From Obrimoposthia wandeli (Eukaryota), in contig CDROCS010006248.1 in NCBI GenBank assembly GCA_977020255.1, positions 1 to 64,000 of the forward strand: a DNA stretch of 64,000 nucleotides. Direction: 5' to 3'. Within the stretch, counting starts at the first letter, position 1. Every line of letters begins with the position of its first letter. This document shows, one piece after another, positions 3,667 to 63,277 of the stretch. The translations under genes and the position numbers were made by a program. Under the pieces are notes generated by a model, which made no database searches, had not been told where the DNA came from, and was given only the letters and a program-made list of their open reading frames with translations.

Positions 3667-3725
3667 TTGTCGAAGATTGATAAGCGTGCTGCTCCTGAGT
3701 ACTTGTGATTAAACATAATTAAAAT

Positions 3726-3740
3726 TTATGAAGTTCATAA
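3726..3740. promoter_or_regulatory. Putative LysR recognition site
   Basis: Perfect palindrome TTATGAA-G-TTCATAA containing T-N11-A, about 60 bp upstream of the LysR start in the divergent promoter region. Confidence 0.55.
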
Positions 3741-3828
3741 TACTAAGTAGTAATTTTATATATAGCTAGTGATTTTAATGAAGCGAGCCGCATAGCCAAA
3801 ACGAATGATAAACCGAGAGCAAAACGAC

Positions 3829-4191
3829 ATGATAAACAGATTAAACAAAACTGCACGTATGAGCCAAATAGTGAGCTATAACGGCACAGTATTGCTTAGT
3901 GGCCAAGTTGCCAAAGATGCAAGCCAAGATGTACAGGGCCAGACTCGCCAAATACTACAACAAATTGATGATCTGCTAGCACAAGCTGGTTGTGAGAAGA
4001 GCGATGTGCTCAGCGCCAATATTTGGTTGAGCGACATTCGCCAATTCGCACTAATGAATGAAATATGGGATAGCTGGGTCGATGCTGAAAACCCACCAGT
4101 GCGTGCTTGTGTAGAAGCGCGTCTGGCTCGAGTTGAGCTGGCAGTAGAGATACAAGTAATGGCTGCTGAATCTTCAGCAAAAGGACACTGA
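3829..4191 (+). CDS. RidA/YjgF-superfamily imine deaminase (Rid2/YoaB-like)
   Basis: RMSQIV...LSGQVA, IWLSDI, MNEIWDSW and PVRACVEARL (conserved Arg), VEIQVMAA. The second ATG (3829) is the likely start; the ORF track starts at 3805. Confidence 0.9.
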   Translation: MINRLNKTARMSQIVSYNGTVLLSGQVAKDASQDVQGQTRQILQQIDDLLAQAGCEKSDVLSANIWLSDIRQFALMNEIWDSWVDAENPPVRACVEARLARVELAVEIQVMAAESSAKGH

Positions 4192-4195
4192 TTGC

Positions 4196-5473: not shown

Positions 5474-5519
5474 CAGCACAAACAAGAATTATTTATAGAT
5501 CATTACACAGAGGATAAGT

Positions 5520-6239
5520 ATGACAATTTTAAAAGGCGGTTTTAACTATTACAGCATCCCAATTGGGGTTATCTGCTTAGAATCTTATTTTCCAAAACCG
5601 CTTGGTCACATTAAGCACCCAGCCGGTTTTGATTTTCCAGTATTGTACAAAACAGTACAAGGCGCCACGATTGCACGTTTAATCGGTCAACGAGATCCTG
5701 CATTACTGCAGCCTTTTATTGAAGCGGCGCAAGAATTAGAACGTGAAGGGGTTAAAGCGATTACAGCTAGCTGTGGTTTCTTAGCTTTATTTCAGCGAGA
5801 AATAGCAGATGCTGTTGATATTCCTGTATTTATTTCAAGCTTGATACAAATCCCTATGGTGTATAACAGCCTTGGACGTCATCGTAAAGTGGGCGTGGTT
5901 GTAGCTAATAGTGATGCGTTATCTGAAGATCATTTGATAGCCGTCGGTGCACAGAACATTCCTATCGCACTAGCCGGTATGCAGCATCAGCCACAGTTTG
6001 CAGATGTAATATTACATGCCAAGAGCAATGATTTTGATGTAGATATTTTTCGCGATGAATTATTCACAGTGATCGAGAATTTGATCAGTGAAAACCCTGA
6101 TCTGGGTTCTATCGTTTTAGAATGTACTGATTTATCACACTTCGCACCACAAGTGCAGGAGCGTTTTAACTTACCAGTGTACGACTTAACCAGTTTGACA
6201 AGAATGGTAGCTGCGACAGTAGAACGTAAAATCGCTTAA
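5520..6239 (+). CDS. Aspartate/glutamate/hydantoin racemase-family protein (PLP-independent)
   Basis: Two catalytic-type Cys motifs (ITASCGFL, VLECTDL) and the C-terminal PVYD typical of the family. Confidence 0.75.
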   Translation: MTILKGGFNYYSIPIGVICLESYFPKPLGHIKHPAGFDFPVLYKTVQGATIARLIGQRDPALLQPFIEAAQELEREGVKAITASCGFLALFQREIADAVDIPVFISSLIQIPMVYNSLGRHRKVGVVVANSDALSEDHLIAVGAQNIPIALAGMQHQPQFADVILHAKSNDFDVDIFRDELFTVIENLISENPDLGSIVLECTDLSHFAPQVQERFNLPVYDLTSLTRMVAATVERKIA

Positions 6240-6310
6240 TGTTGTAAAAATATTAAAAGCTGTGAAAATGGCAAAACAGTGTTTTTTACAAAACAGTGAC
6301 TGTTACAAAA

Positions 6311-6342
6311 CAAGATCAATTTTATCTATTAAATTGATCTTG
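6311..6342. terminator. AT-rich hairpin between convergent racemase and transaminase genes
   Basis: CAAGATCAATTT-N8-AAATTGATCTTG, a perfect 12-bp inverted repeat. Confidence 0.4.
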
Positions 6343-6366
6343 CTGTGCGCTTATCAGTATTAGCTA

Positions 6367-7335
6367 TTAACAGTTAGCTAACACAGTACCTTTAGTCAAC
6401 TGATCTTCAATAAGTAATGCACGTGCAGCTTTTGCAACAGGGCCAGGCTTTCCGTCACCTACCATCTTACCAGCAACTTCTACCACTGGAAGGGCATCTA
6501 GTGTGGTGCCAACCATGAATATTTCTTTAGCATTCATTAGGCCATCAGCTTGTTGCTTCTCTTCTTTCATTTCGCGAATAAGGCCTTGTTCAACCATCTT
6601 GTGCGATAATTCTTGAAGCCTTAACAGCGTAGTGCCTCTTAAGGTGTGATCGAAACTTGAGAAGATCAAATCATTTTCAGGCGTTAAGTAGGCGATGTTT
6701 TCAGTCGGGCCTTCACCAAGATCACCCTCTTCAGTGACGTTGATTACAAAGTTAAGTTTGCTATCAACTGCTTCTTTGCTCATCAGTACATTGGATAAGT
6801 AATTACATGATTTAGTTTTAGCCATGCCGCCACTTTTAACCGCTACTTGGCTGAAGCCAATTTTAGCGCCATCATCATAAAGGGTTGCAGCAGGGTTACT
6901 TAATGTTGAAACGATTAAGTACAACTGTGGGCCGATTGAAACATAAGGATTTGGCGTGAAACCACCTGGTCCGCGTGATGCGTACAAGCGAAACAGCGCA
7001 TTGTCTAGGCCACATACTTCAATCAACTGCTTACAAATAGCTTTGATTTCGTCTCTGTCGTGTTTCAAATCAAGGAATATATCAGCCGCTGAGCGCTCTA
7101 AGCGCGCTAAGTGCTCATCAAGTAAAAACACTTTTCCTTCAAGCATTTTAAAAGCTTCAAAAACACCGTCGCCTCTGTGTACTAAATGGTCATCCACTGG
7201 AATAGTCATCAATTTTGGGTCAGTTGTAATGCCGCCAAAGACGCTTGAATACATCGCGTGATAGTCATTTTGTGCAGCGTAGCTTGGGCAAGCTGCAACG
7301 ATTTGCTCTAAATTGTCATATACGGGAAAAGTCAT
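6367..7335 (-). CDS. Fold-type IV PLP aminotransferase, plant-type D-amino-acid transaminase-like
   Basis: IPVDDHLVHRGDGVFE, KSCNYLSNVL (PLP Lys), EGPTEN, LRGTT and EIFMVGT. Confidence 0.8.
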   Translation of the reverse strand: MTFPVYDNLEQIVAACPSYAAQNDYHAMYSSVFGGITTDPKLMTIPVDDHLVHRGDGVFEAFKMLEGKVFLLDEHLARLERSAADIFLDLKHDRDEIKAICKQLIEVCGLDNALFRLYASRGPGGFTPNPYVSIGPQLYLIVSTLSNPAATLYDDGAKIGFSQVAVKSGGMAKTKSCNYLSNVLMSKEAVDSKLNFVINVTEEGDLGEGPTENIAYLTPENDLIFSSFDHTLRGTTLLRLQELSHKMVEQGLIREMKEEKQQADGLMNAKEIFMVGTTLDALPVVEVAGKMVGDGKPGPVAKAARALLIEDQLTKGTVLANC

Positions 7336-7850: not shown

Positions 7851-8705
7851 ATGTCGCGTAGTTATCGAATAATATTAGATTGTCCAGATCGCATTGGTAT
7901 CGCCAGTAGTGTAGGTGCTGTTATTACTGAACTAGGGGGCTGGGTAAGTGAAGCGGCTCATCATTCAGATGAAGAGAGTAAATGGTTTTTTTCGCGCATT
8001 GAAGTACAGGCCGATTCTCTGAGCATCAGCTTAGAGGCCTTTCGTGAAGCGTTTGTACCGCTAATTAAAGCGTTTAATCTCAATTTAAAAGTAGTCGATA
8101 GCGAAGCGCCAAAAAGAGTAGTGATGATGGCCAGTAAAGGCAGTCATTGTTTGGCTGATTTACTAGATCGCTGGAAAAATGGTGATTTGAACTGCGAAAT
8201 AAGCTGTGTGATTTCTAATCACCAAGATTTAGAGTCTTTGGTGCAGTGGTACGGTATTCCTTACCATTATGTGCCAGTAGACAAAGATAATAAAAGCAGT
8301 AGCTTTGCTAAAGTGGAAGCTTTGATTGAGCAATACCAAGCGCAGTGTGTTGTGCTGGCGCGATACATGCAAATTTTACCGCTATCGCTGTGTGAAAAAC
8401 TACCCTTTCAAGTGCTAAATATTCATCATAGTTTTCTGCCCTCTTTCGTCGGTGCAAAGCCTTACCATCAGGCTTCTCGTAGAGGGGTCAAGCTGATTGG
8501 TGCTACTTGCCATTATGTTACTGAAGAATTAGATCAGGGCCCTATTATTGATCAAGATGTGGTGCGCGTTAGACACTCTGATAAGGTTCAAGATTTAGTG
8601 CGCTTAGGTAAAGATGTTGAGAAAACGGTGTTAGCCAGAGGTCTGCGTGCACATTTAGAAGATAGAGTGTTAGTGCATGGTAATAAAACAGTCGTTTTCG
8701 ATTAG
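7851..8705 (+). CDS. purU: Formyltetrahydrofolate deformylase
   Basis: ACT domain CPDRIGI, HCLADLL, VISNH, LARYMQIL, NIHHSFLPSFVGAKPYHQA and GPIIDQDV. Confidence 0.96.
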   Translation: MSRSYRIILDCPDRIGIASSVGAVITELGGWVSEAAHHSDEESKWFFSRIEVQADSLSISLEAFREAFVPLIKAFNLNLKVVDSEAPKRVVMMASKGSHCLADLLDRWKNGDLNCEISCVISNHQDLESLVQWYGIPYHYVPVDKDNKSSSFAKVEALIEQYQAQCVVLARYMQILPLSLCEKLPFQVLNIHHSFLPSFVGAKPYHQASRRGVKLIGATCHYVTEELDQGPIIDQDVVRVRHSDKVQDLVRLGKDVEKTVLARGLRAHLEDRVLVHGNKTVVFD

Positions 8706-8825
8706 ACGTACCATTAAAAGTTAAATAACTAAAAATAAAAACATAGAGCATTGCACTAACAAACATATGACATGTGCACCGCTTATTTTTAATAACTGTA
8801 AAAACAGTTATATCAGGAGATTATA

Positions 8826-11276
8826 ATGAGTAATAAAGTACCTTCTAGCGCACAAATCGTGATTGTCGGCGGCGGTGTTATCGGCTGTAGTGTTGCCTAT
8901 CATTTAACTAAGTTAGGTTTTACTGATGTCGTGCTATTAGAGCGTCGCCAGTTAACTTGCGGTACTACTTGGCATGCAGCTGGTCTAGTACCTACGCTTC
9001 GTGCTACTTATAATATGTCTATGTTGGCTAAATATAGTGCTGATCTGTATGAACAGCTGCAAGCTGAAACAGGCCAAGCAACGGGCTTTGTGCGTAATGG
9101 CTCGTTAACAATAGCCACTAATAAAGAGCGTTTAGCAGAGCTTAAACGCGGTGCTTCTATGGCAAAAGTAGCAGGCTTTCCTTGTAATGTTATAGATCCT
9201 CAGCAAGCCAAAGATTTATGGCCACTATTAAATATTGATGATGTATTAGGTGCTATTCACTTACCGCTTGATGGTGTGGTTAACCCTGTTGATGTGACGC
9301 AAGCCTTAGCAAAAGGCGCACGTATGGGCGGTGCGAAAATAATTGAAGGCGTGAAAGTGCTTGATATGAAAATTCGCGATGGCAAAGCGGCAGGAGTAAT
9401 TACTGAGCAAGGTGATATAGATGCTGAGTATGTGGTCAACTGCAGTGGTATGTGGGCGCGTGAATTTGGGCGCAAAGCGGGTGTCAATGTACCACTACAT
9501 GCAGCAGAGCATTTCTATGTAGTTACTGAGAACATGCCCAACTTAGGTCGTGGATTACCAACATTGCGTGATATGGATGGCTATTGCTATTACAAAGAAG
9601 ATGCGGGCAAGCTTTTAGTCGGCATGTTTGAACCAGGCGCTAAGCCTTGGGGAATGGATGGCATTCCTGAAGATTTCTTTTTTGATGAGTTGCCCGAAGA
9701 TTTTGACCATTTAGAACCCTATTTAGAAGCAGCGATGCATCGTGTGCCTGAGCTTGAAAAAACCGGTTTGCAGGTGTTCTTCAATGGTCCTGAAGCCTTT
9801 ACGCCCGATGACCGTTATCACTTAGGTGAAGCGCCAGAGTTAAAGAATTATTTTGTAGCAGCAGGATTTAACTCTGTCGGTATTCAATCAGCGGGGGGTG
9901 CAGGTAAAATGCTCGCTAATTGGATCAAGAAAGGGCATGCCCCACAAGATTTATGGGATGTTGATATTCGACGCAACATGCCTTTTCAAGGTACCCAAGC
10001 TTACTTACAAGAGCGCACGACAGAAACGCTGGGTTTGTTGTATGAAACGCATTATCCTTTTAAGCAATTTAAAACAGCGAGAGGTGTGCGCCGTTCTGTA
10101 TTACATGATCAATTGAAAGCACAAGGCGCGGTATTTGGCACAGAAAGCGGCTGGGAGCGTGCTAACTGGTTCGCTAATGAAGGGCAAGAAGCGAGTTATG
10201 AGTACTCGTTTGGTCGCCAAAATTGGTTTGAAAATAATGCTCAAGAGCACCATGCTGTACGTAATAGTGTGGCTGTTATCGATCAGAGTTCGTTCTCTAA
10301 ATACCAAGTAGAGGGGCCGGATGCGCTGCGCTTTTTAAACAAGGTGTGCTCTAACAATGTTGATGTAGCACTTGGTAAAATGGTTTATACCCAATGGTTA
10401 AATGAGCGCGGTGGAATAGAAGCGGACGTCACTGTCACGCGTATAACCGAGCAACGCTTTTTGATTGTCTCAGGTGTCGCTTGTCAAAATCGTGATATGG
10501 ATTGGCTTAAGCGTAACAAGCCTGATGATGGTTTAATCGTCATTACCGATTTAACATCTGCTTATGCCGTTATTACGGTCATGGGGCCACGCTCAAGAGA
10601 GACGCTATCAAAGCTAACGCAAGCGGATATGAGCAACGAAGCTTTCCCATTTGGTAGCTCACAAGAGATCGATATGCATTATGCAATAGTGCGTGCATCA
10701 CGTATCACATACGTAGGCGAACTAGGTTGGGAGCTCTACATACCCACTGAATATGCGCCAAGTGTGTACGATGCTCTCTTTGAGGTAGGCAAAGAATTCT
10801 CAATACGCCCTTATGGTTATCACACCATGAATTCATTGCGCATGGAAAAATGCTATCGCCATTGGGGGCACGATATAACGGATGCCGATACAGCATTAGA
10901 AGCAGGTTTAAGCTTTGCCTCAGATTTCAATAAAGAGGGCGGTTTTATCGGCCGTGAAGCGCTGTTGGCACAAAAAGCAGAAGGTGCTCTTAAAAAGCGT
11001 TTTATAGCGTTCTTATTTGAAAATCCAGAGCCGCTTTGTTATCACGAAGAACCTATCTATGCCAATGGTGTCATTGTTGGGCGTACTACCGCAGGCATGT
11101 TCTGTCATACTTTAGGTGCAACGGTCGCGATGGGTTATGTTGAATACGAGCAAGGTGTGACGAAAGAGTGGTTAGATAGCAGTACATTTGAAATTGAAGT
11201 GGAATGTGAGTGCTATGCTGTACAAGCCTCGTTAAGACCATTTTATGATCCTAAAATGGAAAGGATTAAATGCTAA
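8826..11276 (+). CDS. GcvT-family FAD/THF-dependent demethylating dehydrogenase (dimethylglycine/sarcosine dehydrogenase-like)
   Basis: 816 aa. GGGVIGCS, LTCGTTWHAAG, NGPEAFTPD, GWERANWF, RITYVGELGWE and SLRMEK: DAO domain plus GcvT domain. Confidence 0.88.
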   Translation: MSNKVPSSAQIVIVGGGVIGCSVAYHLTKLGFTDVVLLERRQLTCGTTWHAAGLVPTLRATYNMSMLAKYSADLYEQLQAETGQATGFVRNGSLTIATNKERLAELKRGASMAKVAGFPCNVIDPQQAKDLWPLLNIDDVLGAIHLPLDGVVNPVDVTQALAKGARMGGAKIIEGVKVLDMKIRDGKAAGVITEQGDIDAEYVVNCSGMWAREFGRKAGVNVPLHAAEHFYVVTENMPNLGRGLPTLRDMDGYCYYKEDAGKLLVGMFEPGAKPWGMDGIPEDFFFDELPEDFDHLEPYLEAAMHRVPELEKTGLQVFFNGPEAFTPDDRYHLGEAPELKNYFVAAGFNSVGIQSAGGAGKMLANWIKKGHAPQDLWDVDIRRNMPFQGTQAYLQERTTETLGLLYETHYPFKQFKTARGVRRSVLHDQLKAQGAVFGTESGWERANWFANEGQEASYEYSFGRQNWFENNAQEHHAVRNSVAVIDQSSFSKYQVEGPDALRFLNKVCSNNVDVALGKMVYTQWLNERGGIEADVTVTRITEQRFLIVSGVACQNRDMDWLKRNKPDDGLIVITDLTSAYAVITVMGPRSRETLSKLTQADMSNEAFPFGSSQEIDMHYAIVRASRITYVGELGWELYIPTEYAPSVYDALFEVGKEFSIRPYGYHTMNSLRMEKCYRHWGHDITDADTALEAGLSFASDFNKEGGFIGREALLAQKAEGALKKRFIAFLFENPEPLCYHEEPIYANGVIVGRTTAGMFCHTLGATVAMGYVEYEQGVTKEWLDSSTFEIEVECECYAVQASLRPFYDPKMERIKC

Positions 11277-56637: not shown

Positions 56638-56725
56638 ACTATCATCGATAAATGATTAGATTTGTTCGTTAAAATTTTACAGTTCTCAATATCGGTTGCT
56701 TAAGTGATGAAAGAAAGGGGCGAAA

Positions 56726-57355
56726 ATGAGTAACCAGCATGAAAATCAATTAATATTGAATGAAGAGTTGTTGTTAGCGAAAGGAGGAGAGAGATATTGC
56801 TATCTTCATCCTCAAGATGAGTTAAAGGTCATAAAAATTTCAAAAACTACAACAAAAAGTAATCATCAAAATAAATTAGAATTTATATACCTTCAATATC
56901 TGGTAAAGCATAATCGGGACTTACAGCATCTCGCTAAATGTTATGGATACGTAGAAACCAACTTTGGTGAAGGTCTGGTTTTTGATCGCGCTTTGAATTT
57001 TGATCAAAGTCCAGCTCACTCTTTGCAATATATGATGCTTAATAAGACAATTGCGGTGGATGTACAAGAACAGTTAATAAATGAGCTAGTTGAGTATTTA
57101 GATAAGCAGCAAATACTTTTTGTTGATACCTGCTTGAGTAACGTTTTTTGTATTAAAAAGAACGCTAATGATTATAAGTTAATTATAGTAGATGGCTTAG
57201 GAGCGAAGCGGCTTAATTACAAGTACTGGCTTTATATTTATATTGGATTGTACCGAAGATATAAAATTTATAAGCAAGGATTAAAATTGAAGCGTTTTCA
57301 TAAATCTGATTTAGTAAAGATCGCCAATGGCAAAACAAGTTTTTCTAGAATGTAA
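56726..57355 (+). CDS. YrbL-family kinase-like protein (copy 1)
   Basis: GGERYCYLHP...IK, ETNFGEGLVF, DTCLSN and IIVDGLG. Confidence 0.8.
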   Translation: MSNQHENQLILNEELLLAKGGERYCYLHPQDELKVIKISKTTTKSNHQNKLEFIYLQYLVKHNRDLQHLAKCYGYVETNFGEGLVFDRALNFDQSPAHSLQYMMLNKTIAVDVQEQLINELVEYLDKQQILFVDTCLSNVFCIKKNANDYKLIIVDGLGAKRLNYKYWLYIYIGLYRRYKIYKQGLKLKRFHKSDLVKIANGKTSFSRM

Positions 57356-57411
57356 ACTATTCAGTCTCTGTTTTTTTAAGTTTTAGTAACGTAATCAATA
57401 AGATAACAATA

Positions 57412-57981
57412 ATGATAGAATTAAATGATAGCTTGTTACTTGGTGAAGGGAATGAAAGATATTGCTATCTTCATCCAAATGATCCACTTAAAGTAATAAA
57501 AATAGAAAAGAGTCATAAATCGAAGAAACAAAATAAAATTGACTCTATTTATTACCGTCACCTAGCACGCCAAAAAGTGGATTTTTCATCTATTAGTAAA
57601 TGCTATCAATGGGAAGACACTTCACTAGGAGAGGGCTTAGTATTCGAGAGAGTGACTAATTATGATCAATCTCCGGTGCTTTCTTTTGAGGAAGTGGTTG
57701 TCCAAAAGTTATTGTCTCAAGAGCAGCAAATAAAGCTAATGAAAGAGTTAGAGTTGTATCTTAGGAAAAACAACATTTTATTTATTGATGTCAGTCTATC
57801 GAATATTATTTGTAAGAAGGTCAGCGATAAAAAATGGTTGTTAGTGATTATTGATGGGCTAGGGGCAAGACGTTTAAAGCTGAAGTTCTGGTTTCAAAGA
57901 AATATTAAAATATATGCTCAATATAAAGTTCGAAAACAGTGGAAAGTTTTCTTAGAAAATCATCGACAGCTCACCGTTTAG
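57412..57981 (+). CDS. YrbL-family kinase-like protein (copy 2)
   Basis: GNERYCYLHP...IK, DTSLGEGLVF, DVSLSN and VIIDGLG. Confidence 0.8.
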   Translation: MIELNDSLLLGEGNERYCYLHPNDPLKVIKIEKSHKSKKQNKIDSIYYRHLARQKVDFSSISKCYQWEDTSLGEGLVFERVTNYDQSPVLSFEEVVVQKLLSQEQQIKLMKELELYLRKNNILFIDVSLSNIICKKVSDKKWLLVIIDGLGARRLKLKFWFQRNIKIYAQYKVRKQWKVFLENHRQLTV

Positions 57982-58085
57982 TTTTCCTTTGATTCTCTGC
58001 TTAGCGTTATGTTACTGATGCGTTCAGTTGTTGCTATGATAATCTCTACAAATTACCAGTACTGAATAACCTATAGCGATCATTA

Positions 58086-59867
58086 TTAAGCGCTTAAATG
58101 GTTTCTATCAAGGTTTGATATGATCTGTTCGATATGTAAAAGTGCGGCGTGTAGATCTAAACACACATAGGCGCCAGCCAATGTTAATTGTTCACAAACA
58201 TCTTCTGGCAAACTATTGATTGAATCTTGGCTGATTTGATTTAATCGACCACCAATTAGCACCGGCATATCTCGGTATAGCTTTTTCAACTCATCATCAA
58301 GTGCATTGTAATAGTTTAAAGCAACGCCGTTATAGGTACTTAGTGCAATAAAATCTACGTTTTGATCGGTAGCTGCTGTTGCAAGTATTTGTGCATCGAC
58401 TGAAATACCACCGTCTATAATTTCAATACCCAGTTGATCGAAACACAATGAAACAAGCACTTTACCGTGCTCGTGCACATCTGATGTGGCGGTCATACAG
58501 CGTAATTTACTCTTTGCAATGCGCTGAGCATAACCATCAGGTAAGTTGCTAATAAAAGCGTGCGCTAGCGCTTCTAATTCGACATAAGTAGTAGCGGTAA
58601 CTATTGGCTTGCGACCGTTAGGGCTCTTTTTGTCTAATAAGCCTGGGCCATAAAGCTGCTCTAAACGACGCGCTCCTATGCGTCTTAGAGCAAGTAACAT
58701 TTCAGCGGGGTCAGTGATGTTAAAACCACCTGCTTGTAATGCGAGTAATACATTGTTTTTAAAACGCTCAGCACCTTCAAACATTTTTTGCGCTATAGGC
58801 TCAATATTATCTAGAGATATAAGCTGAGTGTAACCACTACCTTGTTCAACTAAAGTAGCAGCAAACGTTTGCGCTTGAATAATCTCTTCTATATCAGGTA
58901 TGCGGATATTTTCAGTGACAGGCACTGGGTTGATCGCATGGCCTGTAGGCATTATTTTTTGACCAATAATGTCGGTGAGTAAATAGCTGCCTAAACTGGC
59001 AAAATTAGCGGCAGCATCCCCTTTATAATTCACCGTGGCGCCGAAAATCATGGTGCCGCTACTGGGATTGGTTTTTTGAAGTGCTCTTTGAAAAGCCAAG
59101 CGTGCGAAAGGCTCGCTAAAGTGGTGTCCATAACAATGAGCCATGGTGCCGCCGATTAAATCTTCAACAATGTACTTTTCAATCATGATGGCGCCTAAAC
59201 AGCACGCTAAGTCAGAAAACTGCGCGCCGAAGCCATCATCTATATTGGAATGAATGAGAACTTTTTCAGGCTGTGCGGCAATTAAACCTAATGCCTTTAC
59301 TGTGGCCTCTGTTGTCGCAATATCATCATCCCAACCAGGCAGTCTAAAAGTAAAGTATTGACCTAAGTTACCTAGCGCTGTGGCACCTGCACTTAAAGCG
59401 CCTTGAGTGTTTTCTAAAGAGCCTGGAAAGCCTAGCATGAAGTCACCAAAGTGAGGTGCTACTGGGCTATTTTGGGTGAGTTCACAAAACTGTTCTACGT
59501 CTTTAAGCATGATGCCCGTGCCACTAGCCCCCATCTTTTGACGAATAGCTAGCGGGTACCCCATTGACCAATCTAAGCAGAGACCAAAGCGATCTATACG
59601 AACGCCTTTTTTTATGCAGCGCTCGTAAATGTCGGCGCAGGCATTAATGGTTTTTTGTGGATCACGAAAGCCAATGTGCGCATGCTGCATCACTCGGCCT
59701 TTCTTGACCTGTAATCGCTTGTATTCATCTTCACTAGAGACATTGTATTCATCAAAAAAAGCACAGCGACCAATCGGCCAAGCTACTTGTAAAGCAGCGC
59801 CTTCTGCTAGTAGCTCTTTGCCGTTGCGTAATTCGCCGTCTTTGATAATGCTGTTTTTTTCGATCAT
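58086..59867 (-). CDS. Single-chain cobalamin-dependent mutase-like protein (catalytic barrel plus B12-binding domain)
   Basis: C-terminal base-off/His-on motifs SDVHEHG (DxHxxG), IALSTYNG and LIGG. Barrel segment PVTENIRIPDIEEI resembles glutamate/2-methyleneglutarate mutase-type enzymes. 593 aa. Confidence 0.75.
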   Translation of the reverse strand: MIEKNSIIKDGELRNGKELLAEGAALQVAWPIGRCAFFDEYNVSSEDEYKRLQVKKGRVMQHAHIGFRDPQKTINACADIYERCIKKGVRIDRFGLCLDWSMGYPLAIRQKMGASGTGIMLKDVEQFCELTQNSPVAPHFGDFMLGFPGSLENTQGALSAGATALGNLGQYFTFRLPGWDDDIATTEATVKALGLIAAQPEKVLIHSNIDDGFGAQFSDLACCLGAIMIEKYIVEDLIGGTMAHCYGHHFSEPFARLAFQRALQKTNPSSGTMIFGATVNYKGDAAANFASLGSYLLTDIIGQKIMPTGHAINPVPVTENIRIPDIEEIIQAQTFAATLVEQGSGYTQLISLDNIEPIAQKMFEGAERFKNNVLLALQAGGFNITDPAEMLLALRRIGARRLEQLYGPGLLDKKSPNGRKPIVTATTYVELEALAHAFISNLPDGYAQRIAKSKLRCMTATSDVHEHGKVLVSLCFDQLGIEIIDGGISVDAQILATAATDQNVDFIALSTYNGVALNYYNALDDELKKLYRDMPVLIGGRLNQISQDSINSLPEDVCEQLTLAGAYVCLDLHAALLHIEQIISNLDRNHLSA

Positions 59868-60062
59868 TACAATGGCCTTTTTTAACGTTGACTAATGACT
59901 GGTTTAAGTAATTCGTCAATGGATTTGGCTGTTGATAGTTTTTGTATAAGCTTTCGTAAATAACTCAATGATGAGCTATTTGTGGAGATCTAATACTTAT
60001 TACTTGGAGGATATATCAGATTAAGTGATGATTATAAATTAAGAAACGCAAACGGAGAACGG

Positions 60063-60890
60063 CTAAACAGCGCTTGATATGGAATGCTTAAAGCGTAAAT
60101 ATTTTTCAACATTAGCGCGTAGGTTTTCTTCGGTGATGGTACCAATAACGGCGCTGTTAACCGCAGGTTGTGAGAAAATTAGTTTTAAGCTTTCATAAAT
60201 AGCATCGGTTTTAAGAGCTGCATCTGAGCTGTTTTTTGGTAAGTGACCTGATGCAAAGGCTTTTTTTATAAAAATACCTTTAGCGTGTTGTTGAGCGTAA
60301 TCAATAACAGGCATTTCTAACTGAGTACTTAAGTTAAGGGTCACCATGGCGCAGTCGGCTTGCTTAAGAGTAGCAATACCACCTTCAATTGTTTTAGTCG
60401 ACATGCCTGTTGCGCGTATTTTCCCCTGCTGCTTTAGCGTGTTTAATGTATGCAGCGCACAGTCTTGCTCAATGATTTTTAAGTCGTCACCGTTAGAATG
60501 AATCATCACGATATCTAAATAGTCTGTTTTAAGTGTGCGCAAGCTGCGCTCTACACTTTGCGTAATCGCGCTAGGGCTGAAATCATAAGAAGATAAACCG
60601 CTTTGACTATTAAACTCTTCACCTGCTTTGGTGCTGATGATCCAGTTTTGACGCTCATTAGTTGACAGTAATTCGCCAAGACGCTGCTCGCTATTGCCAT
60701 AAGCAGGCGCTGTATCTAATAAGTTAATGCCCATCTCTTGGCAAATACTCAGTAGCTGCAATACCTGTTGATCATCGGGAATGGTAAAGCTATTAGGGTA
60801 CTTTACGCCTTGATCACGCCCTATTTTGACTGTTCCAAAGCCAATTGCGCTGACGTTTACGCCGGTATCTGCAACTTCACTATAGTGCAT
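60063..60890 (-). CDS. Aldo/keto reductase
   Basis: SAIGFGT, LDTAPAYGNSE, ISTKAG, SLRTLKTDYLD, GTI and NLRAN. Confidence 0.92.
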   Translation of the reverse strand: MHYSEVADTGVNVSAIGFGTVKIGRDQGVKYPNSFTIPDDQQVLQLLSICQEMGINLLDTAPAYGNSEQRLGELLSTNERQNWIISTKAGEEFNSQSGLSSYDFSPSAITQSVERSLRTLKTDYLDIVMIHSNGDDLKIIEQDCALHTLNTLKQQGKIRATGMSTKTIEGGIATLKQADCAMVTLNLSTQLEMPVIDYAQQHAKGIFIKKAFASGHLPKNSSDAALKTDAIYESLKLIFSQPAVNSAVIGTITEENLRANVEKYLRFKHSISSAV

Positions 60891-60891
60891 G

Positions 60892-62076
60892 TTATGTCTG
60901 CCAAGCATGGGTGGCGATTGAAGGGCGCGCTAAGTGCTCTAGCTGTTCATCATCAATTGAGTACTGAGGTATGATATTTTGCTCTTTTAGTAATTGCTGA
61001 ACCTTGTCACTTAAGTCGGGGGCAAGTGCCAGCTTAGTCGGCCAGGCAACGAAATAGTTTTGATCACTTTGTACAAAGGCGCAATCAGGGCGGCTTAAGC
61101 TACTCTGTTTAGGTTCGGCGCGATTAATGCGTAAGGTATCCCAATGTGCTTCTTGTAAATCTACCCAAGGCAGCAATTTGGCAATAAGCTGCTTGGCGTG
61201 CTCAATTTGTTGCTCTTTATCGCGTTCAACACCTGTTTCTGCTAAGTCGCCACCTAAATACCAGGTAAAACTAGCGTCACTATTTTCATGGTGCGTGATG
61301 GTCACCAGAGGCTTGCTGCTAGCACCAATACAATGTGCGTAAATGGGTAAATTAGTTTGGTGAGTAATCGTCACCATATGTAATGGGCGCAGTTGCATTT
61401 TTGGCTGACTGATATTTAGTTGATTCAAAATAGCGCCATTGCCTTCGCCCGCTGTAAAAATAAAGCGCTGTGCAGTAATTTTTAAGGCGTGTTCATGGCA
61501 AGTTATTGAACTAATGTTTTGTTGGGCGTCTTGTTGCCATTCACATTGGTTAGTGTCTATTTTTAAAATGCGTTGCGGAATATTTTTAGCTAAGGTTTGT
61601 AGCACAGAGGGTACATCTAACACTATTTCATTGAGCTTATACAAATTACCCTTAAACTCAGGATGGTTAAATATAGCGGGGTAGTTTGCAGGTGCGACGC
61701 TATCAACGCGTCCACTCATCGCTTTTTTAGCGAAAAAAGAGGTGATTTTAGCGCCTAGCGATTGTTGAGACCATAAATAATGAGCATCACTGTATTGCTT
61801 TACGCCTTGTAAATTAATATCACCAGTGCCAGCGATGCATTGTTTCCAGCGCTCTGGCATTTCTTTAATCGCATCACTCGCTTGAGATAAAACACCATTG
61901 AGCGCATATTTCATGCCCCCGTGAATAATCCCTTGAGAGCGCACTGTTTGGCCACCGCCAATAGTATCTGCCTCAAGTAAGAGCACGCTATAACCTTGTT
62001 TGGTTAAACTATTAAGCATCCACAGTCCAGCGACACCGGCTCCGATAATGACAATATCTGTATTTAGTTCTTTCAT
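60892..62076 (-). CDS. FAD-dependent oxidoreductase (DAO superfamily)
   Basis: IIGAGVAGLW, SQGIIHGGMKY, RINRAEP and WPTKLALAP. Confidence 0.85.
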   Translation of the reverse strand: MKELNTDIVIIGAGVAGLWMLNSLTKQGYSVLLLEADTIGGGQTVRSQGIIHGGMKYALNGVLSQASDAIKEMPERWKQCIAGTGDINLQGVKQYSDAHYLWSQQSLGAKITSFFAKKAMSGRVDSVAPANYPAIFNHPEFKGNLYKLNEIVLDVPSVLQTLAKNIPQRILKIDTNQCEWQQDAQQNISSITCHEHALKITAQRFIFTAGEGNGAILNQLNISQPKMQLRPLHMVTITHQTNLPIYAHCIGASSKPLVTITHHENSDASFTWYLGGDLAETGVERDKEQQIEHAKQLIAKLLPWVDLQEAHWDTLRINRAEPKQSSLSRPDCAFVQSDQNYFVAWPTKLALAPDLSDKVQQLLKEQNIIPQYSIDDEQLEHLARPSIATHAWQT

Positions 62077-62125
62077 AGGTATGCTGATCTGTGTTTTGAG
62101 TGAATGATAAGCTTAGTACCCTATT

Positions 62126-62671
62126 TTAAGAATTGGTTTCATTGATAATAAATTGGCTAAAATGCGCGAGATCATCAAAGATTAATGTATCGTTTGAAAT
62201 TATGCCTTTATCAATGCTACGTTGACCTTTGCCCGTTTTTACAAAAGCAACTTGCATATTTATCTGCTGAGCAGCTTGAATATCTCGCAAGCTATCACCT
62301 ACAAACCAAATCTCGCTATCATCGCCGCGGTGGCCTTGTAAAATATCTAGCAGCATACCCGGTAACGGTTTACGACACTCACAGCCATCATCAGGTGTAT
62401 GTGGGCAGTATGCAATTTGCGAAATATTGCCACCTGCATGAGCAACCAAATCATGCATTTTTTGATGCATAGCATGTAAGGTCGTTAGCGAATAGTAATG
62501 ACGGCCAATACCGGATTGATTAGTGGCAACCGCAATACGGTAGCCAGCTTTGCTTAAATCAGCGATTGCTTGAATGCTACCGGGTAATGCTATCCACTGA
62601 TCAACTGTACGAATATAATCATCTGAATCATAATTGATGACGCCATCTCTATCTAAAATAATGAGCTTCAT
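62126..62671 (-). CDS. gmhB: D,D-heptose 1,7-bisphosphate phosphatase
   Basis: LDRDGVIN, TNQSGIG, CPH...C.CRKP.PGM and GDSLRD. Confidence 0.95.
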   Translation of the reverse strand: MKLIILDRDGVINYDSDDYIRTVDQWIALPGSIQAIADLSKAGYRIAVATNQSGIGRHYYSLTTLHAMHQKMHDLVAHAGGNISQIAYCPHTPDDGCECRKPLPGMLLDILQGHRGDDSEIWFVGDSLRDIQAAQQINMQVAFVKTGKGQRSIDKGIISNDTLIFDDLAHFSQFIINETNS

Positions 62672-62677
62672 AAACGA

Positions 62678-63277
62678 TTAACGCTGCGCTTTTTCAAGTG
62701 CACGACGATCAGCATCTTCGCACAACCAATGGCCGACAAAAATATGCGCTTCCTGTACTCTCGCGGTTTCAGTCGCAGGCACCGTTAGTGTGTGATCGGC
62801 AATGTCTTTAAGTAAACCACCGTCTTCTCCGGTCCAAGCCCAAGTGGTAACGCCTAAGCCTTTAGCCACTTCTATCGCATGAATAATGTTTTTGCTGTTA
62901 CCAGAGGTTGAAATGCCGATAATAATATCTTCAGCTCTCGCAAGTGCTGCCACTTGGCGGCTAAAGACAGTATCGAAAGAGAAGTCATTGGCATGTGCGG
63001 TTATCAATGAAGTGTCAGTGGTTAATGCGATGGCTGCTAAAGGTGAGCGTTCTGCTTTATAGCGTACAACAAACTCAGTCGCTAAGTGTTGGCAATCAGC
63101 TGCACTGCCGCCATTACCCATGAATAATAGTTTGCCGCCGTTGTCGAAGCACTTATTTACTTGTTCAGATAGTGTTATAAGAGCTGGTTCACATTGTGCC
63201 ATTTTTGAAAATAACTGCTGGTGGCGTTGCAATGCATTTTGGTATGAAGACTGTGCTGCAGGCATAATGATATTCAC
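62678..63277 (-). CDS. gmhA: Phosphoheptose isomerase (SIS domain)
   Basis: GNGGSAADCQH, ANDFSF, ISTSGNS and RVQEAHI. Confidence 0.9.
   Translation of the reverse strand: MNIIMPAAQSSYQNALQRHQQLFSKMAQCEPALITLSEQVNKCFDNGGKLLFMGNGGSAADCQHLATEFVVRYKAERSPLAAIALTTDTSLITAHANDFSFDTVFSRQVAALARAEDIIIGISTSGNSKNIIHAIEVAKGLGVTTWAWTGEDGGLLKDIADHTLTVPATETARVQEAHIFVGHWLCEDADRRALEKAQR

What the first reader, a model, noticed from the sequence alone, without database searches (positions are those of the whole stretch)
58086..59867. Orphan single-chain B12 radical mutase embedded in the LPS locus
Seen: a 593-aa protein with an intact DxHxxG/SxxxG/GG cobalamin domain fused behind a barrel. The barrel lacks recognisable acyl-CoA mutase signatures and resembles glutamate or 2-methyleneglutarate mutase types. 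From memory, Eubacterium barkeri Mgm is a single chain of similar size and layout. None of the expected partners (methylitaconate isomerase, methylaspartase, MeaB/MutL chaperone, cobalamin uptake, riboswitch) is in the window. It lies downstream of, and co-oriented with, gmhA-gmhB-oxidoreductase-AKR. Inference: a carbon-skeleton rearrangement on an unknown non-CoA substrate, either a stray insertion or a new B12-dependent step in envelope or small-acid metabolism.
Basis: partly seen in the sequence, partly recalled or inferred. Interest (0 to 1): 0.75.

Follow-up and report, generated by a model that had tools for sequence, protein, structure and literature searches.

The report
Orphan single-chain B12 radical enzyme
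This is an intact gene for an uncharacterised but widespread vitamin-B12 enzyme built like a fused glutamate mutase; it was inserted by chance into a lipopolysaccharide gene cluster, and its relatives sit next to proline and hydroxyproline genes, which hints at a B12 reaction not yet described.

Summary
Window 58086-59867 (minus strand) encodes a 593-aa protein with a C-terminal His-on B12 domain (DVHEHG, STYNG, GG) behind a 445-aa TIM-barrel module.

The barrel matches no Pfam, NCBIfam or PDB sequence. A confident AlphaFold model is closest in fold to glutamate mutase GlmE, then to the lysine and ornithine aminomutases and methylmalonyl-CoA mutase.

The protein belongs to a large unnamed family: at least 1498 clusters and at least 576 loci in species-representative genomes, mostly Alphaproteobacteria.

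The LPS setting is incidental. Two related Oceanospirillales genomes keep the same locus with gmhA-gmhB-oxidoreductase-AKR directly facing hldE. They lack the B12 gene and the two yrbL genes. None of 80 homologous loci shares these neighbours.

Across 75 analysed loci the recurrent partner is a divergent pyrroline-5-carboxylate reductase, found in 29 and often overlapping the B12 gene's stop codon. Also recurrent are 4-hydroxyproline epimerase, D-amino-acid dehydrogenase, DapA-like and ArgE-like genes.

Best reading (inferred, untested): an adenosylcobalamin radical enzyme acting on a hydroxyproline-type amino acid. The likeliest reaction is 4-hydroxyproline to P5C, an oxygen-tolerant counterpart of glycyl-radical HypD. 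It is not an Mgm, GlmE, MCM or PLP-aminomutase orthologue.

The parts
58086..59867 (-). Complete ORF, 593 aa plus stop: single-chain B12-dependent enzyme of an unnamed family
   Evidence: Searches give the ORF and its translation. One search finds >=1498 homologous clusters, best 79% identity. One search gives a full-length AF2 model with pLDDT 90.6 and pTM 0.91.
58533..59867 (-). N-terminal catalytic module, aa 1-445: N-terminal helices, (beta/alpha)8 barrel (aa ~56-325, nt 58893-59702) and a helical tail
   Evidence: No sequence-family hit. Domain model pLDDT 91.1. Foldseek best hits are GlmE 1cb7_B and 6h9e_B, then KamD, MCM and OAM. Family-invariant polar residues sit at or just after all eight strands.
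58221..58499 (-). B12-binding Rossmann domain, Pfam match at aa 457-549 (the whole C-terminal module is aa 446-593, nt 58086-58532)
   Evidence: PF02310 E 8.3e-09. PDB profile hits to the B12 domains of MetH, MCM and GlmS.
58464..58481 (-). DxHxxG motif (D463-V-H465-E-H-G468), with the histidine expected to replace dimethylbenzimidazole as the lower cobalt ligand
   Evidence: Read directly from the sequence. D463 and H465 are invariant even across the wider superfamily.
59868..60062 (-). 195-bp upstream intergenic region containing a 47-nt block (59983-60029) shared with the upstream region of the 79%-identical homologue, which has a different upstream gene
   Evidence: Local score 15 against shuffle mean 10.3, sd 1.6; 11 of 500 shuffles reach it. 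This is weak evidence for an own regulatory region. No convincing promoter or terminator was found by consensus scan.
56638..60062 (.). Segment absent from the syntenic locus of two related genomes: two yrbL-like genes (56726-57355 and 57412-57981, + strand, GC 0.32-0.33) and the B12 gene (GC 0.43)
   Evidence: In L097 and L098, hldE and the AKR gene are convergent with only about 80-110 bp between them. No flanking repeats were found.

Best explanation
The gene encodes an apparently functional member of a widespread, so far uncharacterised family of single-chain adenosylcobalamin-dependent radical enzymes. A GlmE-like TIM barrel holds the substrate, and a fused His-on B12 domain supplies the 5'-deoxyadenosyl radical.

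Shown: the architecture, the fold class, the conservation of the active-site face, the family size, and the gene-neighbourhood pattern.

Inferred: the substrate is a free amino acid of the proline or hydroxyproline group. The most likely reaction is conversion of 4-hydroxyproline, or a close derivative or isomer, into delta1-pyrroline-5-carboxylate. The proposed steps are H-abstraction at C5, then a 1,2-shift or elimination of the C4 hydroxyl, then return of the hydrogen. A P5C reductase then makes proline. Many genomes carry a dedicated reductase paralogue translationally coupled to this gene. In this genome the housekeeping enzyme is presumed to do that step.

In this genome the gene is a stand-alone horizontal insertion into a conserved LPS-core locus and has nothing to do with LPS.

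Confidence by tier:
- AdoCbl radical enzyme on a small non-CoA substrate: about 0.85.
- Proline/hydroxyproline-group substrate: about 0.5.
- The specific Hyp-to-P5C reaction: about 0.3.
For: Fold. The full-length model aligns to MCM alpha (E 2e-13) and GlmE. The barrel module alone is closest to GlmE (E 8e-10), then to 5,6-LAM KamD, MCM and OAM, all of them AdoCbl isomerases.

Cofactor. DxHxxG, SxxxG and GG are invariant.

Active site. Family-invariant polar residues (H62, R68, R93, D99, H139, D142, N167, Q170, H206-S-N, D210-D211, E230, H244-C245, H248-H249, H310, N313, E319, R322) lie at or just after all eight barrel strands. The window protein has all of them.

Neighbourhood of 75 loci:
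- A P5CR-like gene lies within 5 genes in 29 loci and is adjacent in 28.
- Its start overlaps the B12 gene's stop in 11 loci.
- Gene order is inverted in Paracoccaceae and divergent in two others.
- The pair occurs in Alpha- and Gammaproteobacteria and in Acidobacteriota.
- This reductase scores below the proC cutoff (96.9 against 196.75), so it is a paralogue.
- At least one of P5CR, AspDH-like, proline-racemase-family, D-amino-acid dehydrogenase or DapA-like genes lies within 5 genes in 48 of 75 loci.

Specific operons:
- In Ancylobacter the operon reads D-amino-acid dehydrogenase, 4-hydroxyproline epimerase (NF010578, 579.7 bits against cutoff 376), NIPSNAP, B12 gene, DapA-like, t3Hyp-dehydratase-like.
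- The Phyllobacterium plasmid has GntR-P5CR-B12 next to a complete hydroxyproline catabolic cluster.
- ArgE-like deacylase, amidase and S33-type hydrolase genes also recur.

Parsimony. The frequent two-gene module, and the many solo genes, argue that the product is a central metabolite such as P5C.

Precedent. Glycyl-radical HypD makes P5C from Hyp and is encoded next to a P5CR (PMC7077986; PMC13450708).

Insertion. Shown.
Against: No biochemical datum exists for any family member, and everything about the substrate is guilt by association. About a third of loci are uninformative, including this one and its closest relative.

One subgroup sits with AspDH-like, cupin, alpha/beta-hydrolase and 2-oxoacid dehydrogenase E1/E2 genes. 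That fits an amino-keto-acid product better than P5C.

Every characterised AdoCbl eliminase I recall (diol dehydratase, glycerol dehydratase, ethanolamine ammonia-lyase) binds B12 base-on. His-on enzymes are mutases, aminomutases or methyltransferases, so a His-on dehydratase would be unprecedented (this point is from memory).

Operons that already contain the full canonical Hyp pathway do not obviously need a second route.

No adenosyltransferase, G-protein chaperone or reactivase was seen near the proteobacterial members.

The B12 domain's best sequence hits are to methionine synthase.

Loci from related genomes are not independent observations.
Confidence: 0.4

Rival explanations
1. A carbon-skeleton mutase of the glutamate mutase or 2-methyleneglutarate mutase type, acting on an acidic amino acid or dicarboxylate (for example glutamate to 3-methylaspartate) in a fused E+S format.
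For: GlmE is the best structural match of the barrel module. The architecture equals a GlmE-GlmS fusion. The invariant arginines R68, R93 and R109 could bind carboxylates. An AspDH-like dehydrogenase, which could oxidise an aspartate analogue, is adjacent in 9 loci and passes an aspartate dehydrogenase subfamily cutoff (196.8 against 177). From memory, Mgm is a single chain of similar size.
Against: PF06368 does not match any of 30 members, even at E<=10. hhalign of the barrel profile against E. coli GlmE gives 0.2% probability. No methylaspartase, GlmL/MutL, methylitaconate isomerase or other nicotinate-pathway gene is in the window or in any of the 75 loci analysed. A P5C-reductase partner has no role after such a rearrangement.
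Confidence: 0.17
2. A radical C-N lyase or PLP-independent aminomutase that opens or rearranges a hydroxyproline, ornithine or lysine-type substrate to an amino-keto acid such as 2-amino-4-ketopentanoate. This would be the B12 analogue of glycyl-radical HplG or of ethanolamine ammonia-lyase chemistry.
For: The subgroup operons contain cupin, AspDH-like, alpha/beta hydrolase, B12 gene, E1alpha, E1beta, E2, NIPSNAP and a 3-hydroxyacyl-CoA-dehydrogenase-like gene. These would fit deamination of an amino-keto acid and cleavage of a diketo acid. Distant clades in anaerobes sit with class-III aminotransferases, aldehyde dehydrogenases, E1/E2 and an ASKHA ATPase. 4-Hydroxyproline contains the vicinal amino-alcohol motif used by ethanolamine ammonia-lyase (established chemistry). 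HplG is listed in PMC13450708.
Against: The commonest partner is a P5C reductase, often translationally coupled, and it needs a cyclic imine. The PLP-binding lysine of the known B12 aminomutases is missing. These operon types form a minority, about 9 of 75 loci.
Confidence: 0.15
3. A methylcobalamin-type methyltransferase, with a corrinoid domain fused to a substrate-activating barrel. It could, for example, demethylate N-methylproline, N-methyl-hydroxyproline or a betaine.
For: The best sequence hits of the B12 domain are to methionine synthase and corrinoid proteins (34.3 and 27.9 bits against 22.5 for MCM). An invariant H244-C245-x-G-H248-H249 cluster could bind a metal. A Ruegeria locus has an OYE/FAD 677-aa oxidoreductase next door, of the kind annotated (from memory) as N-methylproline demethylase.
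Against: The top 21 structural matches of the barrel module are all AdoCbl isomerase barrels; MetH appears only through the B12 domain. The four-helix cap domain PF02607 of corrinoid methyltransferases is not detected. No second methyltransferase or pterin-binding partner recurs in the neighbourhoods. Anaerobic relatives sit next to an ASKHA ATPase of the kind that reactivates AdoCbl enzymes. That similarity to GlmL is only marginal.
Confidence: 0.1
4. A B12-dependent step in heptose or LPS-core (envelope) biosynthesis, co-transcribed with gmhA-gmhB-oxidoreductase-AKR.
For: The genes are co-oriented and 195 bp apart, inside an LPS-core cluster: GT9 x2, O-antigen ligase, LpxL-like, MsbA, HldE, gmhB and a gmhA-like gene. 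No terminator was predicted after the AKR gene.
Against: Two related genomes have the identical locus without the B12 gene. None of 80 homologous loci has these neighbours. The 79%-identical homologue lies between an ABC-F ATPase and a LysR regulator. A shared upstream block suggests an own control region.
Confidence: 0.02

Closest known systems
Glutamate mutase (GlmE/MutE + GlmS/MutS), AdoCbl-dependent carbon-skeleton mutase
   Same: The barrel module has the same fold plus a following helical region (best Foldseek hit, E 8e-10, TMq 0.55 over about 425 columns). Both have a His-on B12 Rossmann domain with DxHxxG. The substrate is a free small molecule, not a CoA ester (inferred). The family profile hits GlmS chains at E about 2e-5.
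   Different: This is one fused chain instead of two subunits. There is no detectable sequence homology of the barrel: PF06368 is absent and hhalign probability is 0.2%. BLASTP finds no alignment between the C-terminal domain and E. coli GlmS. No GlmL reactivase or methylaspartase lies nearby. The gene partners are different (P5C reductase and hydroxyproline genes).
2-Methyleneglutarate mutase (Mgm) of Eubacterium barkeri
   Same: From memory only: a single chain of about 600 aa with a C-terminal B12 domain and a barrel that showed no obvious sequence similarity to other mutases.
   Different: No Mgm sequence was available, so this could not be compared directly. No named Mgm appeared among the listed best hits of two searches in this superfamily: the 120 best of 1498 and all 53. 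Family members occur mostly in aerobic Alphaproteobacteria, without nicotinate-fermentation genes.
PLP- and AdoCbl-dependent aminomutases (ornithine 4,5-aminomutase OraSE; lysine 5,6-aminomutase KamDE)
   Same: The barrel modules are structurally similar (E 1.5e-6 to 5e-5). Both use His-on B12 binding and act on amino acid substrates. Anaerobic relatives sit near an ASKHA ATPase.
   Different: The PLP-binding lysine lies 11 residues after the cobalt-ligating histidine in both known enzymes (H618/K629 and H133/K144; PMC3958899). Here that position is Phe476, and it is hydrophobic in the family consensus. There are no Pfam matches to the aminomutase families.
Methylmalonyl-CoA mutase and other acyl-CoA mutases (ICM, HCM, IcmF)
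   Same: MCM is the best full-length structural match (E 2e-13), because both the barrel and the B12 domain align in one chain.
   Different: TM-scores are only about 0.5 with rmsd 12-17 A. There is no PF01642 match. NCBIfam hits are confined to the B12 domain and lie far below cutoffs. No MeaB-type G-protein chaperone is nearby.
Glycyl-radical trans-4-hydroxy-L-proline dehydratase HypD with its P5C reductase (functional analogue, not a relative)
   Same: The proposed reaction (Hyp to P5C by radical H-abstraction at C5 and loss of the C4 hydroxyl) and the genomic pairing with a P5C reductase are the same (PMC7077986; PMC13450708).
   Different: The fold and cofactor are entirely different: B12 instead of a glycyl radical with a radical-SAM activase. 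The organisms are mostly aerobes. The activity is only inferred here. [quoted passage not shown]

Membership tests
His-on cobalamin-binding domain proteins (Pfam PF02310) | Pfam PF02310 match above the gathering score | tested here: met
   35.8 bits against cutoff 32.1 at aa 457-549. All 30 family members match.
His-on cobalamin-binding domain proteins (Pfam PF02310) | DxHxxG ... SxL/SxxxG ... GG motif set | tested here: met
   D463-V-H-E-H-G468, S510-T-Y-N-G514 and G539-G540 are invariant in alignment A1.
His-on cobalamin-binding domain proteins (Pfam PF02310) | Actual binding of cobalamin, and which upper ligand (adenosyl or methyl) | not testable with these tools
   Needs purified protein, UV-vis and EPR.
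AdoCbl-dependent isomerase superfamily (TIM barrel capped by a B12 domain) | (beta/alpha)8 barrel structurally similar to known AdoCbl isomerase barrels, in one polypeptide or complex with the B12 domain | tested here: met
   Models have pLDDT about 91 and pTM 0.91-0.92. The top 21 Foldseek PDB hits of the barrel module are GlmE, KamD, MCM and OAM.
Glutamate mutase E subunit (Pfam PF06368 Met_asp_mut_E) | Sequence-profile membership | tested here: not met
   No PF06368 hit at E<=10 in any of 30 members. hhalign of A2 against E. coli O157 GlmE gives probability 0.2%.
Glutamate mutase system | Genomic association with GlmL/MutL reactivase and methylaspartate ammonia-lyase, as in the E. coli O157 locus ECs_0760-0764 | tested here: not met
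   Absent from the 75 analysed loci; among the window's own ORFs only those were scanned and none matched. The reference locus was seen.
Glutamate mutase system | Active-site 'arginine claw' and catalytic Glu at equivalent structural positions | not tested
   No residue-level structural alignment could be obtained. The invariant R68, R93, R109 and E319 are candidates only.
2-Methyleneglutarate mutase (Mgm) | Orthology to E. barkeri Mgm, with a methylitaconate isomerase or nicotinate-pathway context | tested here: inconclusive
   No Mgm sequence was available. No nicotinate-pathway neighbours were seen in any locus, and no source names any homologue Mgm.
Acyl-CoA mutases (MCM, ICM, HCM) | Pfam PF01642 or NCBIfam mutase-barrel match, and a MeaB-type chaperone | tested here: not met
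   Only the B12 domain matches, at 22.5 bits against cutoff 876. No barrel match and no chaperone in the neighbourhoods.
PLP/AdoCbl aminomutases (OAM, 5,6-LAM) | PLP-binding lysine 11 residues after the Co-ligating histidine in the Rossmann domain | tested here: not met
   H618/K629 and H133/K144 per PMC3958899. Here H465+11 is F476, and the family consensus is hydrophobic at that position.
Corrinoid-dependent methyltransferases (MetH-like, MtaC/MtgC systems) | Four-helix cap domain (PF02607) before the Rossmann domain, and a partner methyltransferase module | tested here: not met
   PF02607 was not detected in any member at E<=10. No recurrent methyltransferase neighbour was found. One weak phmmer alignment to MtaC extends over aa 354-563 (E 0.0038), so the exclusion is not absolute.
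Hydroxyproline-to-P5C radical dehydratase function (as in HypD) | Conserved genomic coupling to a P5C reductase | tested here: met
   Adjacent in 28 of 75 loci, with stop/start overlap in 11, across several phyla. Not met in the window itself.
Hydroxyproline-to-P5C radical dehydratase function (as in HypD) | Catalysis of Hyp dehydration to P5C | not testable with these tools
   Requires an enzyme assay.

The most novel reading that the evidence does not exclude
The family is the first adenosylcobalamin-dependent hydroxyproline dehydratase (4-hydroxyproline, or an N-methyl or epimeric form, to P5C). That would make it an oxygen-tolerant counterpart of glycyl-radical HypD. It would also be the first 'base-off/His-on', GlmE-fold B12 enzyme to catalyse an elimination and not a mutase reaction. 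With its coupled P5C reductase it would let aerobic marine, rhizosphere and animal-associated bacteria turn collagen- or plant-wall-derived hydroxyproline directly back into proline.
Probability: 0.3. Interest if true: 0.85.

Novelty: new variant of a known kind. Interest (0 to 1): 0.63.

Why it matters
Only about a dozen reaction types are known for adenosylcobalamin enzymes, and new ones are rare.

This family has at least 576 loci in species-representative genomes, a confidently predicted mutase-like fold, an extremely conserved active-site face, and no name, no Pfam barrel family and no literature.

Its gene partners give a concrete, cheap and falsifiable hypothesis: hydroxyproline to P5C, then proline. 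A 2020 paper on the glycyl-radical enzyme explicitly says this chemistry has no B12 precedent.

If confirmed, it would:
- add a new B12 reaction;
- explain a B12 requirement in hydroxyproline or collagen scavenging by Roseobacters, rhizobia, Brucellaceae and sponge symbionts;
- extend the recurring B12 / glycyl-radical enzyme duality.

For this window specifically, the result removes a misleading link to LPS biosynthesis.

Tried and rejected
1. Plus-strand reading of the stated coordinates is full of stops; the gene is on the minus strand.
2. Sequence searches of the barrel against Pfam, NCBIfam and PDB, both as a single sequence and as a profile, found nothing beyond the B12 domain.
3. hhalign against a real GlmE, fetched from the E. 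coli O157 Sakai locus, gave no signal. BLASTP of the C-terminal domain against its GlmS gave no alignment.
4. I looked for a named relative through a divergent Clostridia clade. All hits are 'cobalamin-dependent protein' and none is Mgm.
5. Exact look-up of the window protein in the contig index found it not on record.
6. Literature searches for a B12-dependent hydroxyproline enzyme, for family descriptions and for Anaerovorax B12 enzymes found nothing relevant.
7. Rfam scan for a cobalamin riboswitch found none. Promoter and terminator scans were not above the shuffle expectation.
8. The small 33-34-aa ORFs called after the B12 genes in anaerobe loci are dissimilar to each other and probably spurious; the window has no equivalent.
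9. The ASKHA (Hydantoinase_A) neighbour in anaerobes shares only the phosphate-1 motif with GlmL (E 0.007), so 'reactivase' remains a guess.
10. The window's DAO-family gene is unrelated to the D-amino-acid dehydrogenase found in hydroxyproline-type loci, apart from the FAD motif.
11. No repeats flank the inserted segment.
12. GC content does not mark the B12 gene as foreign (0.43 against 0.40), unlike the yrbL pair.
13. The first ORF-picking pass lost 13 targets in high-GC loci; it was redone with a GC3-weighted choice. Six of the 81 loci were still left out because the STYNG motif filter failed.
Full report
**1. Observation**

The window has a single long ORF at 58086-59867, read on the minus strand. 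The plus-strand frame of the same coordinates is full of stops. The product is 593 aa.

Pfam recognises only a B12-binding domain, PF02310, at aa 457-549. NCBIfam gives only sub-threshold hits of the same region to MetH, corrinoid proteins, MCM and GlmS.

- D463-V-H465-E-H-G468
- S510-T-Y-N-G514
- G539-G540

All are invariant in a 30-sequence family alignment (A1).

Residues 1-445 match nothing in Pfam, NCBIfam or PDB sequences, either as a single sequence or as a profile.

The window contains no N and nothing that looks human, viral or toxin-like. No step had to be referred.

**2. Fold**

AlphaFold2 with the family alignment gives a confident model for the whole chain (pLDDT 90.6, pTM 0.91). 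The model for residues 1-445 alone is equally confident (pLDDT 91.1).

The N-terminal module consists of a few helices, an eight-stranded (beta/alpha)8 barrel (about aa 56-325) and a helical tail. A Rossmann B12 domain follows.

Foldseek results against the PDB:
- The whole chain is closest to methylmalonyl-CoA mutase alpha (E 2e-13), where both domains align, and to GlmE.
- The barrel module alone is closest to glutamate mutase GlmE (1cb7_B, E 8e-10, TMq 0.55 over 425 columns).
- Next come lysine 5,6-aminomutase KamD, MCM and ornithine 4,5-aminomutase. The first 21 hits are all AdoCbl isomerase barrels.
- Methionine synthase appears only through its B12 domain.

The relationship to GlmE holds at the fold level only. 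PF06368 is not matched by any member at E<=10. hhalign of the barrel profile against a genuine GlmE, taken from the E. coli O157 Sakai glutamate mutase locus, gives 0.2% probability.

The PLP-binding lysine that defines the B12 aminomutases lies 11 residues after the cobalt-ligating histidine: H618/K629 in OAM and H133/K144 in 5,6-LAM (PMC3958899). Here that position is Phe476, and it is hydrophobic in the family consensus.

The protein is therefore a fused 'E+S'-type, His-on, AdoCbl-isomerase-like enzyme. It is not a sequence-level member of the GlmE, acyl-CoA mutase or PLP-aminomutase families.

**3. The family**

- The word-index search finds at least 1498 clusters at E<=1e-3. All are about 590 aa, and all are called 'cobalamin-dependent protein' or mis-called 'MCM cobalamin-binding subunit'.
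- The best hit is 79% identical, from an Oceanospirillaceae MAG. Everything else is <=64%.
- A pattern scan of species-representative genomes finds at least 576 loci. Most are in Hyphomicrobiales, Rhodospirillales, Rhodobacterales and Brucellaceae. Some are in Gammaproteobacteria, with a few in Acidobacteriota, Chloroflexota and Gemmatimonadota.
- A profile of the barrel module alone, searched against 1.84 billion representatives, hits only 526 proteins at E<=1e-3 (175 at E<=1e-30), many of them fragments. The barrel therefore defines a small, distinct superfamily that does not reach GlmE.

Family-invariant polar residues are H62, R68, R93, D99, W100, R109, H139, D142, N167, Q170, H206-S-N, D210-D211, E230, H244-C245, H248-H249, H310, N313, E319 and R322. 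They lie at or just after every one of the eight predicted strands, on the face that would meet the corrin. The window protein has all of them, so it looks functional.

In a wider alignment with members at 22-38% identity (A4), a smaller set is retained: P105, D211, D219, T278, N288, E319 and E403, several glycines, near-invariant R109 and D142, and the B12 motifs. This set probably serves cofactor and radical handling. R68, R93, H139, H206-S-N and the HCYGHH cluster are specific to this family and probably serve substrate binding.

**4. Local context: an insertion into an LPS-core locus**

The surroundings are indeed an LPS inner-core cluster:
- two GT9 heptosyltransferases
- an O-antigen-ligase-like gene
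- an LpxL-like acyltransferase
- MsbA and HldE
- two yrbL-like genes
- on the minus strand: the B12 gene, an AKR, a DAO-family oxidoreductase, gmhB and a gmhA-like SIS gene

The window's DAO-family protein has 68-73% identical homologues in Osedax symbionts and other Oceanospirillales. That places the source organism in this group.

In two of these genomes (Osedax symbiont Rs1, L097, and strain AS21, L098) the same synteny is kept from GlnE through GT9-GT9, LpxL, MsbA and HldE to AKR-DAO-gmhB-gmhA and WaaA. There, however, hldE and the AKR gene are directly convergent with about 80-110 bp between them. The two yrbL genes (GC 0.32-0.33) and the B12 gene (GC 0.43; window 0.40) are extra in the window.

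gmhA-gmhB-DAO-AKR is thus a conserved operon that exists without the B12 gene.

Conversely, none of the other 80 homologous loci has these neighbours. The 79% homologue sits between an ABC-F ATPase and a LysR regulator.

The 195-bp region upstream of the gene shares a 47-nt block with the upstream region of that homologue, even though the upstream genes differ. The local score is 15 against 10.3 +/- 1.6 in shuffles, and 11 of 500 shuffles reach it. This is weak support for an own control region.

No cobalamin riboswitch is present. No flanking repeats mark the insertion.

On the family tree, the window protein and its Oceanospirillaceae relative form a long-branched pair nested among alphaproteobacterial sequences. 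This is consistent with horizontal acquisition.

The reading 'B12-dependent envelope step' is therefore essentially excluded, and 'stray insertion' is supported.

**5. What the family does: evidence from other loci**

I called ORFs in 75 loci (the window plus 74 of the 80 genome loci; six were dropped because the motif filter failed). I clustered the neighbours and annotated cluster representatives.

The dominant partner is a roughly 260-aa pyrroline-5-carboxylate-reductase-like protein:
- It lies within five genes in 29 loci and is adjacent in 28.
- Its start overlaps the B12 gene's stop by 4-8 nt in 11 loci.
- It lies upstream instead in Paracoccaceae and is divergent in two others.
- It is present in Alphaproteobacteria, sponge-associated Gammaproteobacteria and a Holophaga.
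- It scores below the proC equivalog cutoff (96.9 against 196.75), so it is a dedicated paralogue.

Other recurrent neighbours:

| Neighbour | Loci |
|---|---|
| Proline-racemase-family genes | 11 |
| D-amino-acid dehydrogenase (DAO family) | 8 |
| DapA-like | 6 |
| ArgE-like deacylase directly upstream | 7 |
| AspDH-like dehydrogenase | 9 |
| Cupin | 10 |
| S33-type alpha/beta hydrolase | 5 |
| Amidase | 5 |

At least one of P5CR, AspDH, PRS, DAO or DapA-like is within five genes in 48 of 75 loci.

In Ancylobacter and Brucellaceae the B12 gene lies inside a tightly packed operon. The order is D-amino-acid dehydrogenase, 4-hydroxyproline epimerase, NIPSNAP, B12 gene, DapA-like, t3Hyp-dehydratase-like. 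The epimerase is an NCBIfam equivalog (NF010578, 579.7 bits against cutoff 376).

On a Phyllobacterium plasmid, GntR-P5CR-B12 lies back-to-back with a complete hydroxyproline catabolic cluster. That cluster holds an amino-acid ABC transporter, dapA-like, an FAD oxidoreductase, an aldehyde dehydrogenase and a proline racemase family gene.

A minority type occurs in Bosea, Falsochrobactrum and a Neorhizobium plasmid. It reads cupin, AspDH-like, alpha/beta hydrolase, B12 gene, E1alpha-E1beta-E2, NIPSNAP and a hydroxyacyl-CoA-dehydrogenase-like gene, with proC and GntR at the end in Neorhizobium.

Twenty-two loci, including the window, have no operon partner.

**6. Distant clades**

Members at 22-32% identity in anaerobes (Anaerovorax odorimutans, Lactonifactor and MAGs) occur next to the following:
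- class-III aminotransferases
- aldehyde dehydrogenases, Fe-ADH or AFOR
- E1/E2 components
- a GAPDH-like, PGK and Iso_dh trio
- a 560-660-aa Hydantoinase_A-type ASKHA ATPase

Sometimes two paralogues share one locus. The ASKHA protein resembles the GlmL reactivase only in its phosphate-1 motif. It is at best a hint that these enzymes need reactivation, as radical B12 enzymes do. None of these relatives has a name either.

**7. Mechanistic proposal**

Shown:
- a GlmE-fold barrel fused to a His-on B12 domain
- a fully conserved catalytic face
- tight, order-independent coupling to a P5C reductase paralogue
- repeated embedding in hydroxyproline gene clusters

Inferred: the enzyme uses AdoCbl to abstract a hydrogen from a proline-type amino acid and produces a cyclic imine.

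The most economical reaction is 4-hydroxyproline to P5C. The steps would be H-abstraction at C5, migration or loss of the C4 hydroxyl, and return of the hydrogen to C4. A 4-to-5 hydroxyl shift would give the carbinolamine form of P5C.

This is the reaction of glycyl-radical HypD, which is likewise encoded next to a P5CR in Clostridia (PMC7077986; PMC13450708).

The proposal explains two patterns. A two-gene module suffices because its end product is proline. Many genomes, including this one, can carry the gene alone because P5C is a central metabolite handled by ProC or PutA.

The ecology fits as well. Carriers include rhizobia and Brucellaceae (plant hydroxyproline-rich glycoproteins), Roseobacters (algal walls), sponge symbionts, and here a relative of bone-eating-worm symbionts (collagen).

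Literature searches found no B12 enzyme for this reaction. [quoted passage not shown]

**8. Caveats and rivals**

- Everything about the substrate is inferred from association, and related genomes are not independent observations.
- The AspDH/cupin/E1-E2 operons suggest that at least some members yield an open-chain amino-keto acid. That would be a C-N lyase or aminomutase-like outcome, analogous to HplG or to ethanolamine ammonia-lyase chemistry.
- From memory, every characterised AdoCbl eliminase binds B12 base-on, so a His-on dehydratase would be unusual.
- A glutamate-mutase-like carbon-skeleton rearrangement remains possible, given the best fold match and the three invariant arginines. 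It leaves the P5C reductase unexplained, and none of its usual partners is present.
- A methylcobalamin methyltransferase is less likely. The barrel resembles only AdoCbl isomerase barrels, no cap domain was detected, and no second methyltransferase recurs. It is not excluded, because the B12 domain scores best against MetH and there is a His/Cys cluster in the barrel.

My estimates:

| Reading | Probability |
|---|---|
| AdoCbl radical enzyme on a small non-CoA substrate | about 0.85 |
| Proline/hydroxyproline-group substrate | about 0.5 |
| Hyp to P5C specifically | about 0.3 |

**9. Verdict**

It is a single-chain GlmE-like B12 enzyme, locally orphan, and a stray insertion. It is not an envelope enzyme and, as far as can be tested, not an Mgm orthologue.

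The gene is one member of a large, unnamed and experimentally untouched B12 enzyme family, with a specific and testable functional hypothesis. I rate it a new variant of a known kind (the AdoCbl isomerase superfamily), interest 0.63. The novel reading is a B12-dependent hydroxyproline dehydratase, at probability about 0.3 and interest 0.85 if true.

Noticed in passing
window 56726-57355 and 57412-57981 (+ strand): Two tandem yrbL-like (PhoP-network, PF10707) genes with very low GC (0.32-0.33 against 0.40 for the window). They lie between hldE and the B12 gene and are absent from the syntenic locus of two related genomes. They are probably a separate horizontally acquired insertion in the LPS-core cluster.
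   Followed up: partly
window 60063-63277 (- strand); L097 7754-10982; L098 7841-10973: gmhA-like, gmhB, a DAO-family FAD oxidoreductase (394 aa) and an aldo-keto reductase form a conserved four-gene operon in Oceanospirillales (Osedax symbionts, Amphritea, Neptuniibacter, Hahella, Endozoicomonas homologues). The oxidoreductase and AKR overlap by 17 nt in the window. This may be an uncharacterised heptose-modifying or related module. The gmhA-like protein scores below both gmhA equivalog cutoffs (189.7 against 276; 186.8 against 209).
   Followed up: partly
window 1736-2251 and 2311-2694 (+ strand): A TctC-family tricarboxylate receptor is split into two ORFs, matching profile positions 2-118 and 147-264. 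This is a frameshift, a pseudogene or a sequencing error.
   Followed up: no
window 2758-7335: A D-amino-acid-type catabolic cluster: LysR regulator, RidA, a DAO-family dehydrogenase (425 aa, 30% identical to the dehydrogenase of hydroxyproline-type loci), an Asp/Glu-racemase-like gene and a class-IV aminotransferase. It lies about 50 kb from the B12 gene and no link was established.
   Followed up: partly
window 7851-11276: A PurU-like formyltetrahydrofolate deformylase is followed by an 816-aa DAO+GCV_T fusion (dimethylglycine/sarcosine dehydrogenase type). This suggests glycine-betaine-derived one-carbon catabolism in this marine organism.
   Followed up: no
L085/L086/L087 1023-2777 and 9001-10758; L095 2444-4222 and 5854-7608: Distant anaerobic relatives of the family occur as two paralogues in one locus. 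Their neighbours are class-III aminotransferases, an aldehyde dehydrogenase or AFOR, a sigma-54 activator and a Hydantoinase_A-type ASKHA ATPase. A GAPDH-like, PGK and Iso_dh trio recurs in L085 and L096. This may be an unknown amine or amino-acid fermentation pathway (Anaerovorax odorimutans is, from memory, a putrescine fermenter).
   Followed up: partly
L024 and L060 (two strains of Brucella pseudogrignonensis): The species carries two family paralogues in different operon types, one hydroxyproline-type and one AspDH/cupin-type. This suggests sub-functionalisation within the family.
   Followed up: no
window 59983-60029 (- strand); L005 about 9834-9881: A 47-nt block upstream of the B12 gene is shared with the upstream region of the 79% homologue. 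It contains an imperfect dyad, CTGATA...TATTAG, and may be a regulator binding site.
   Followed up: partly
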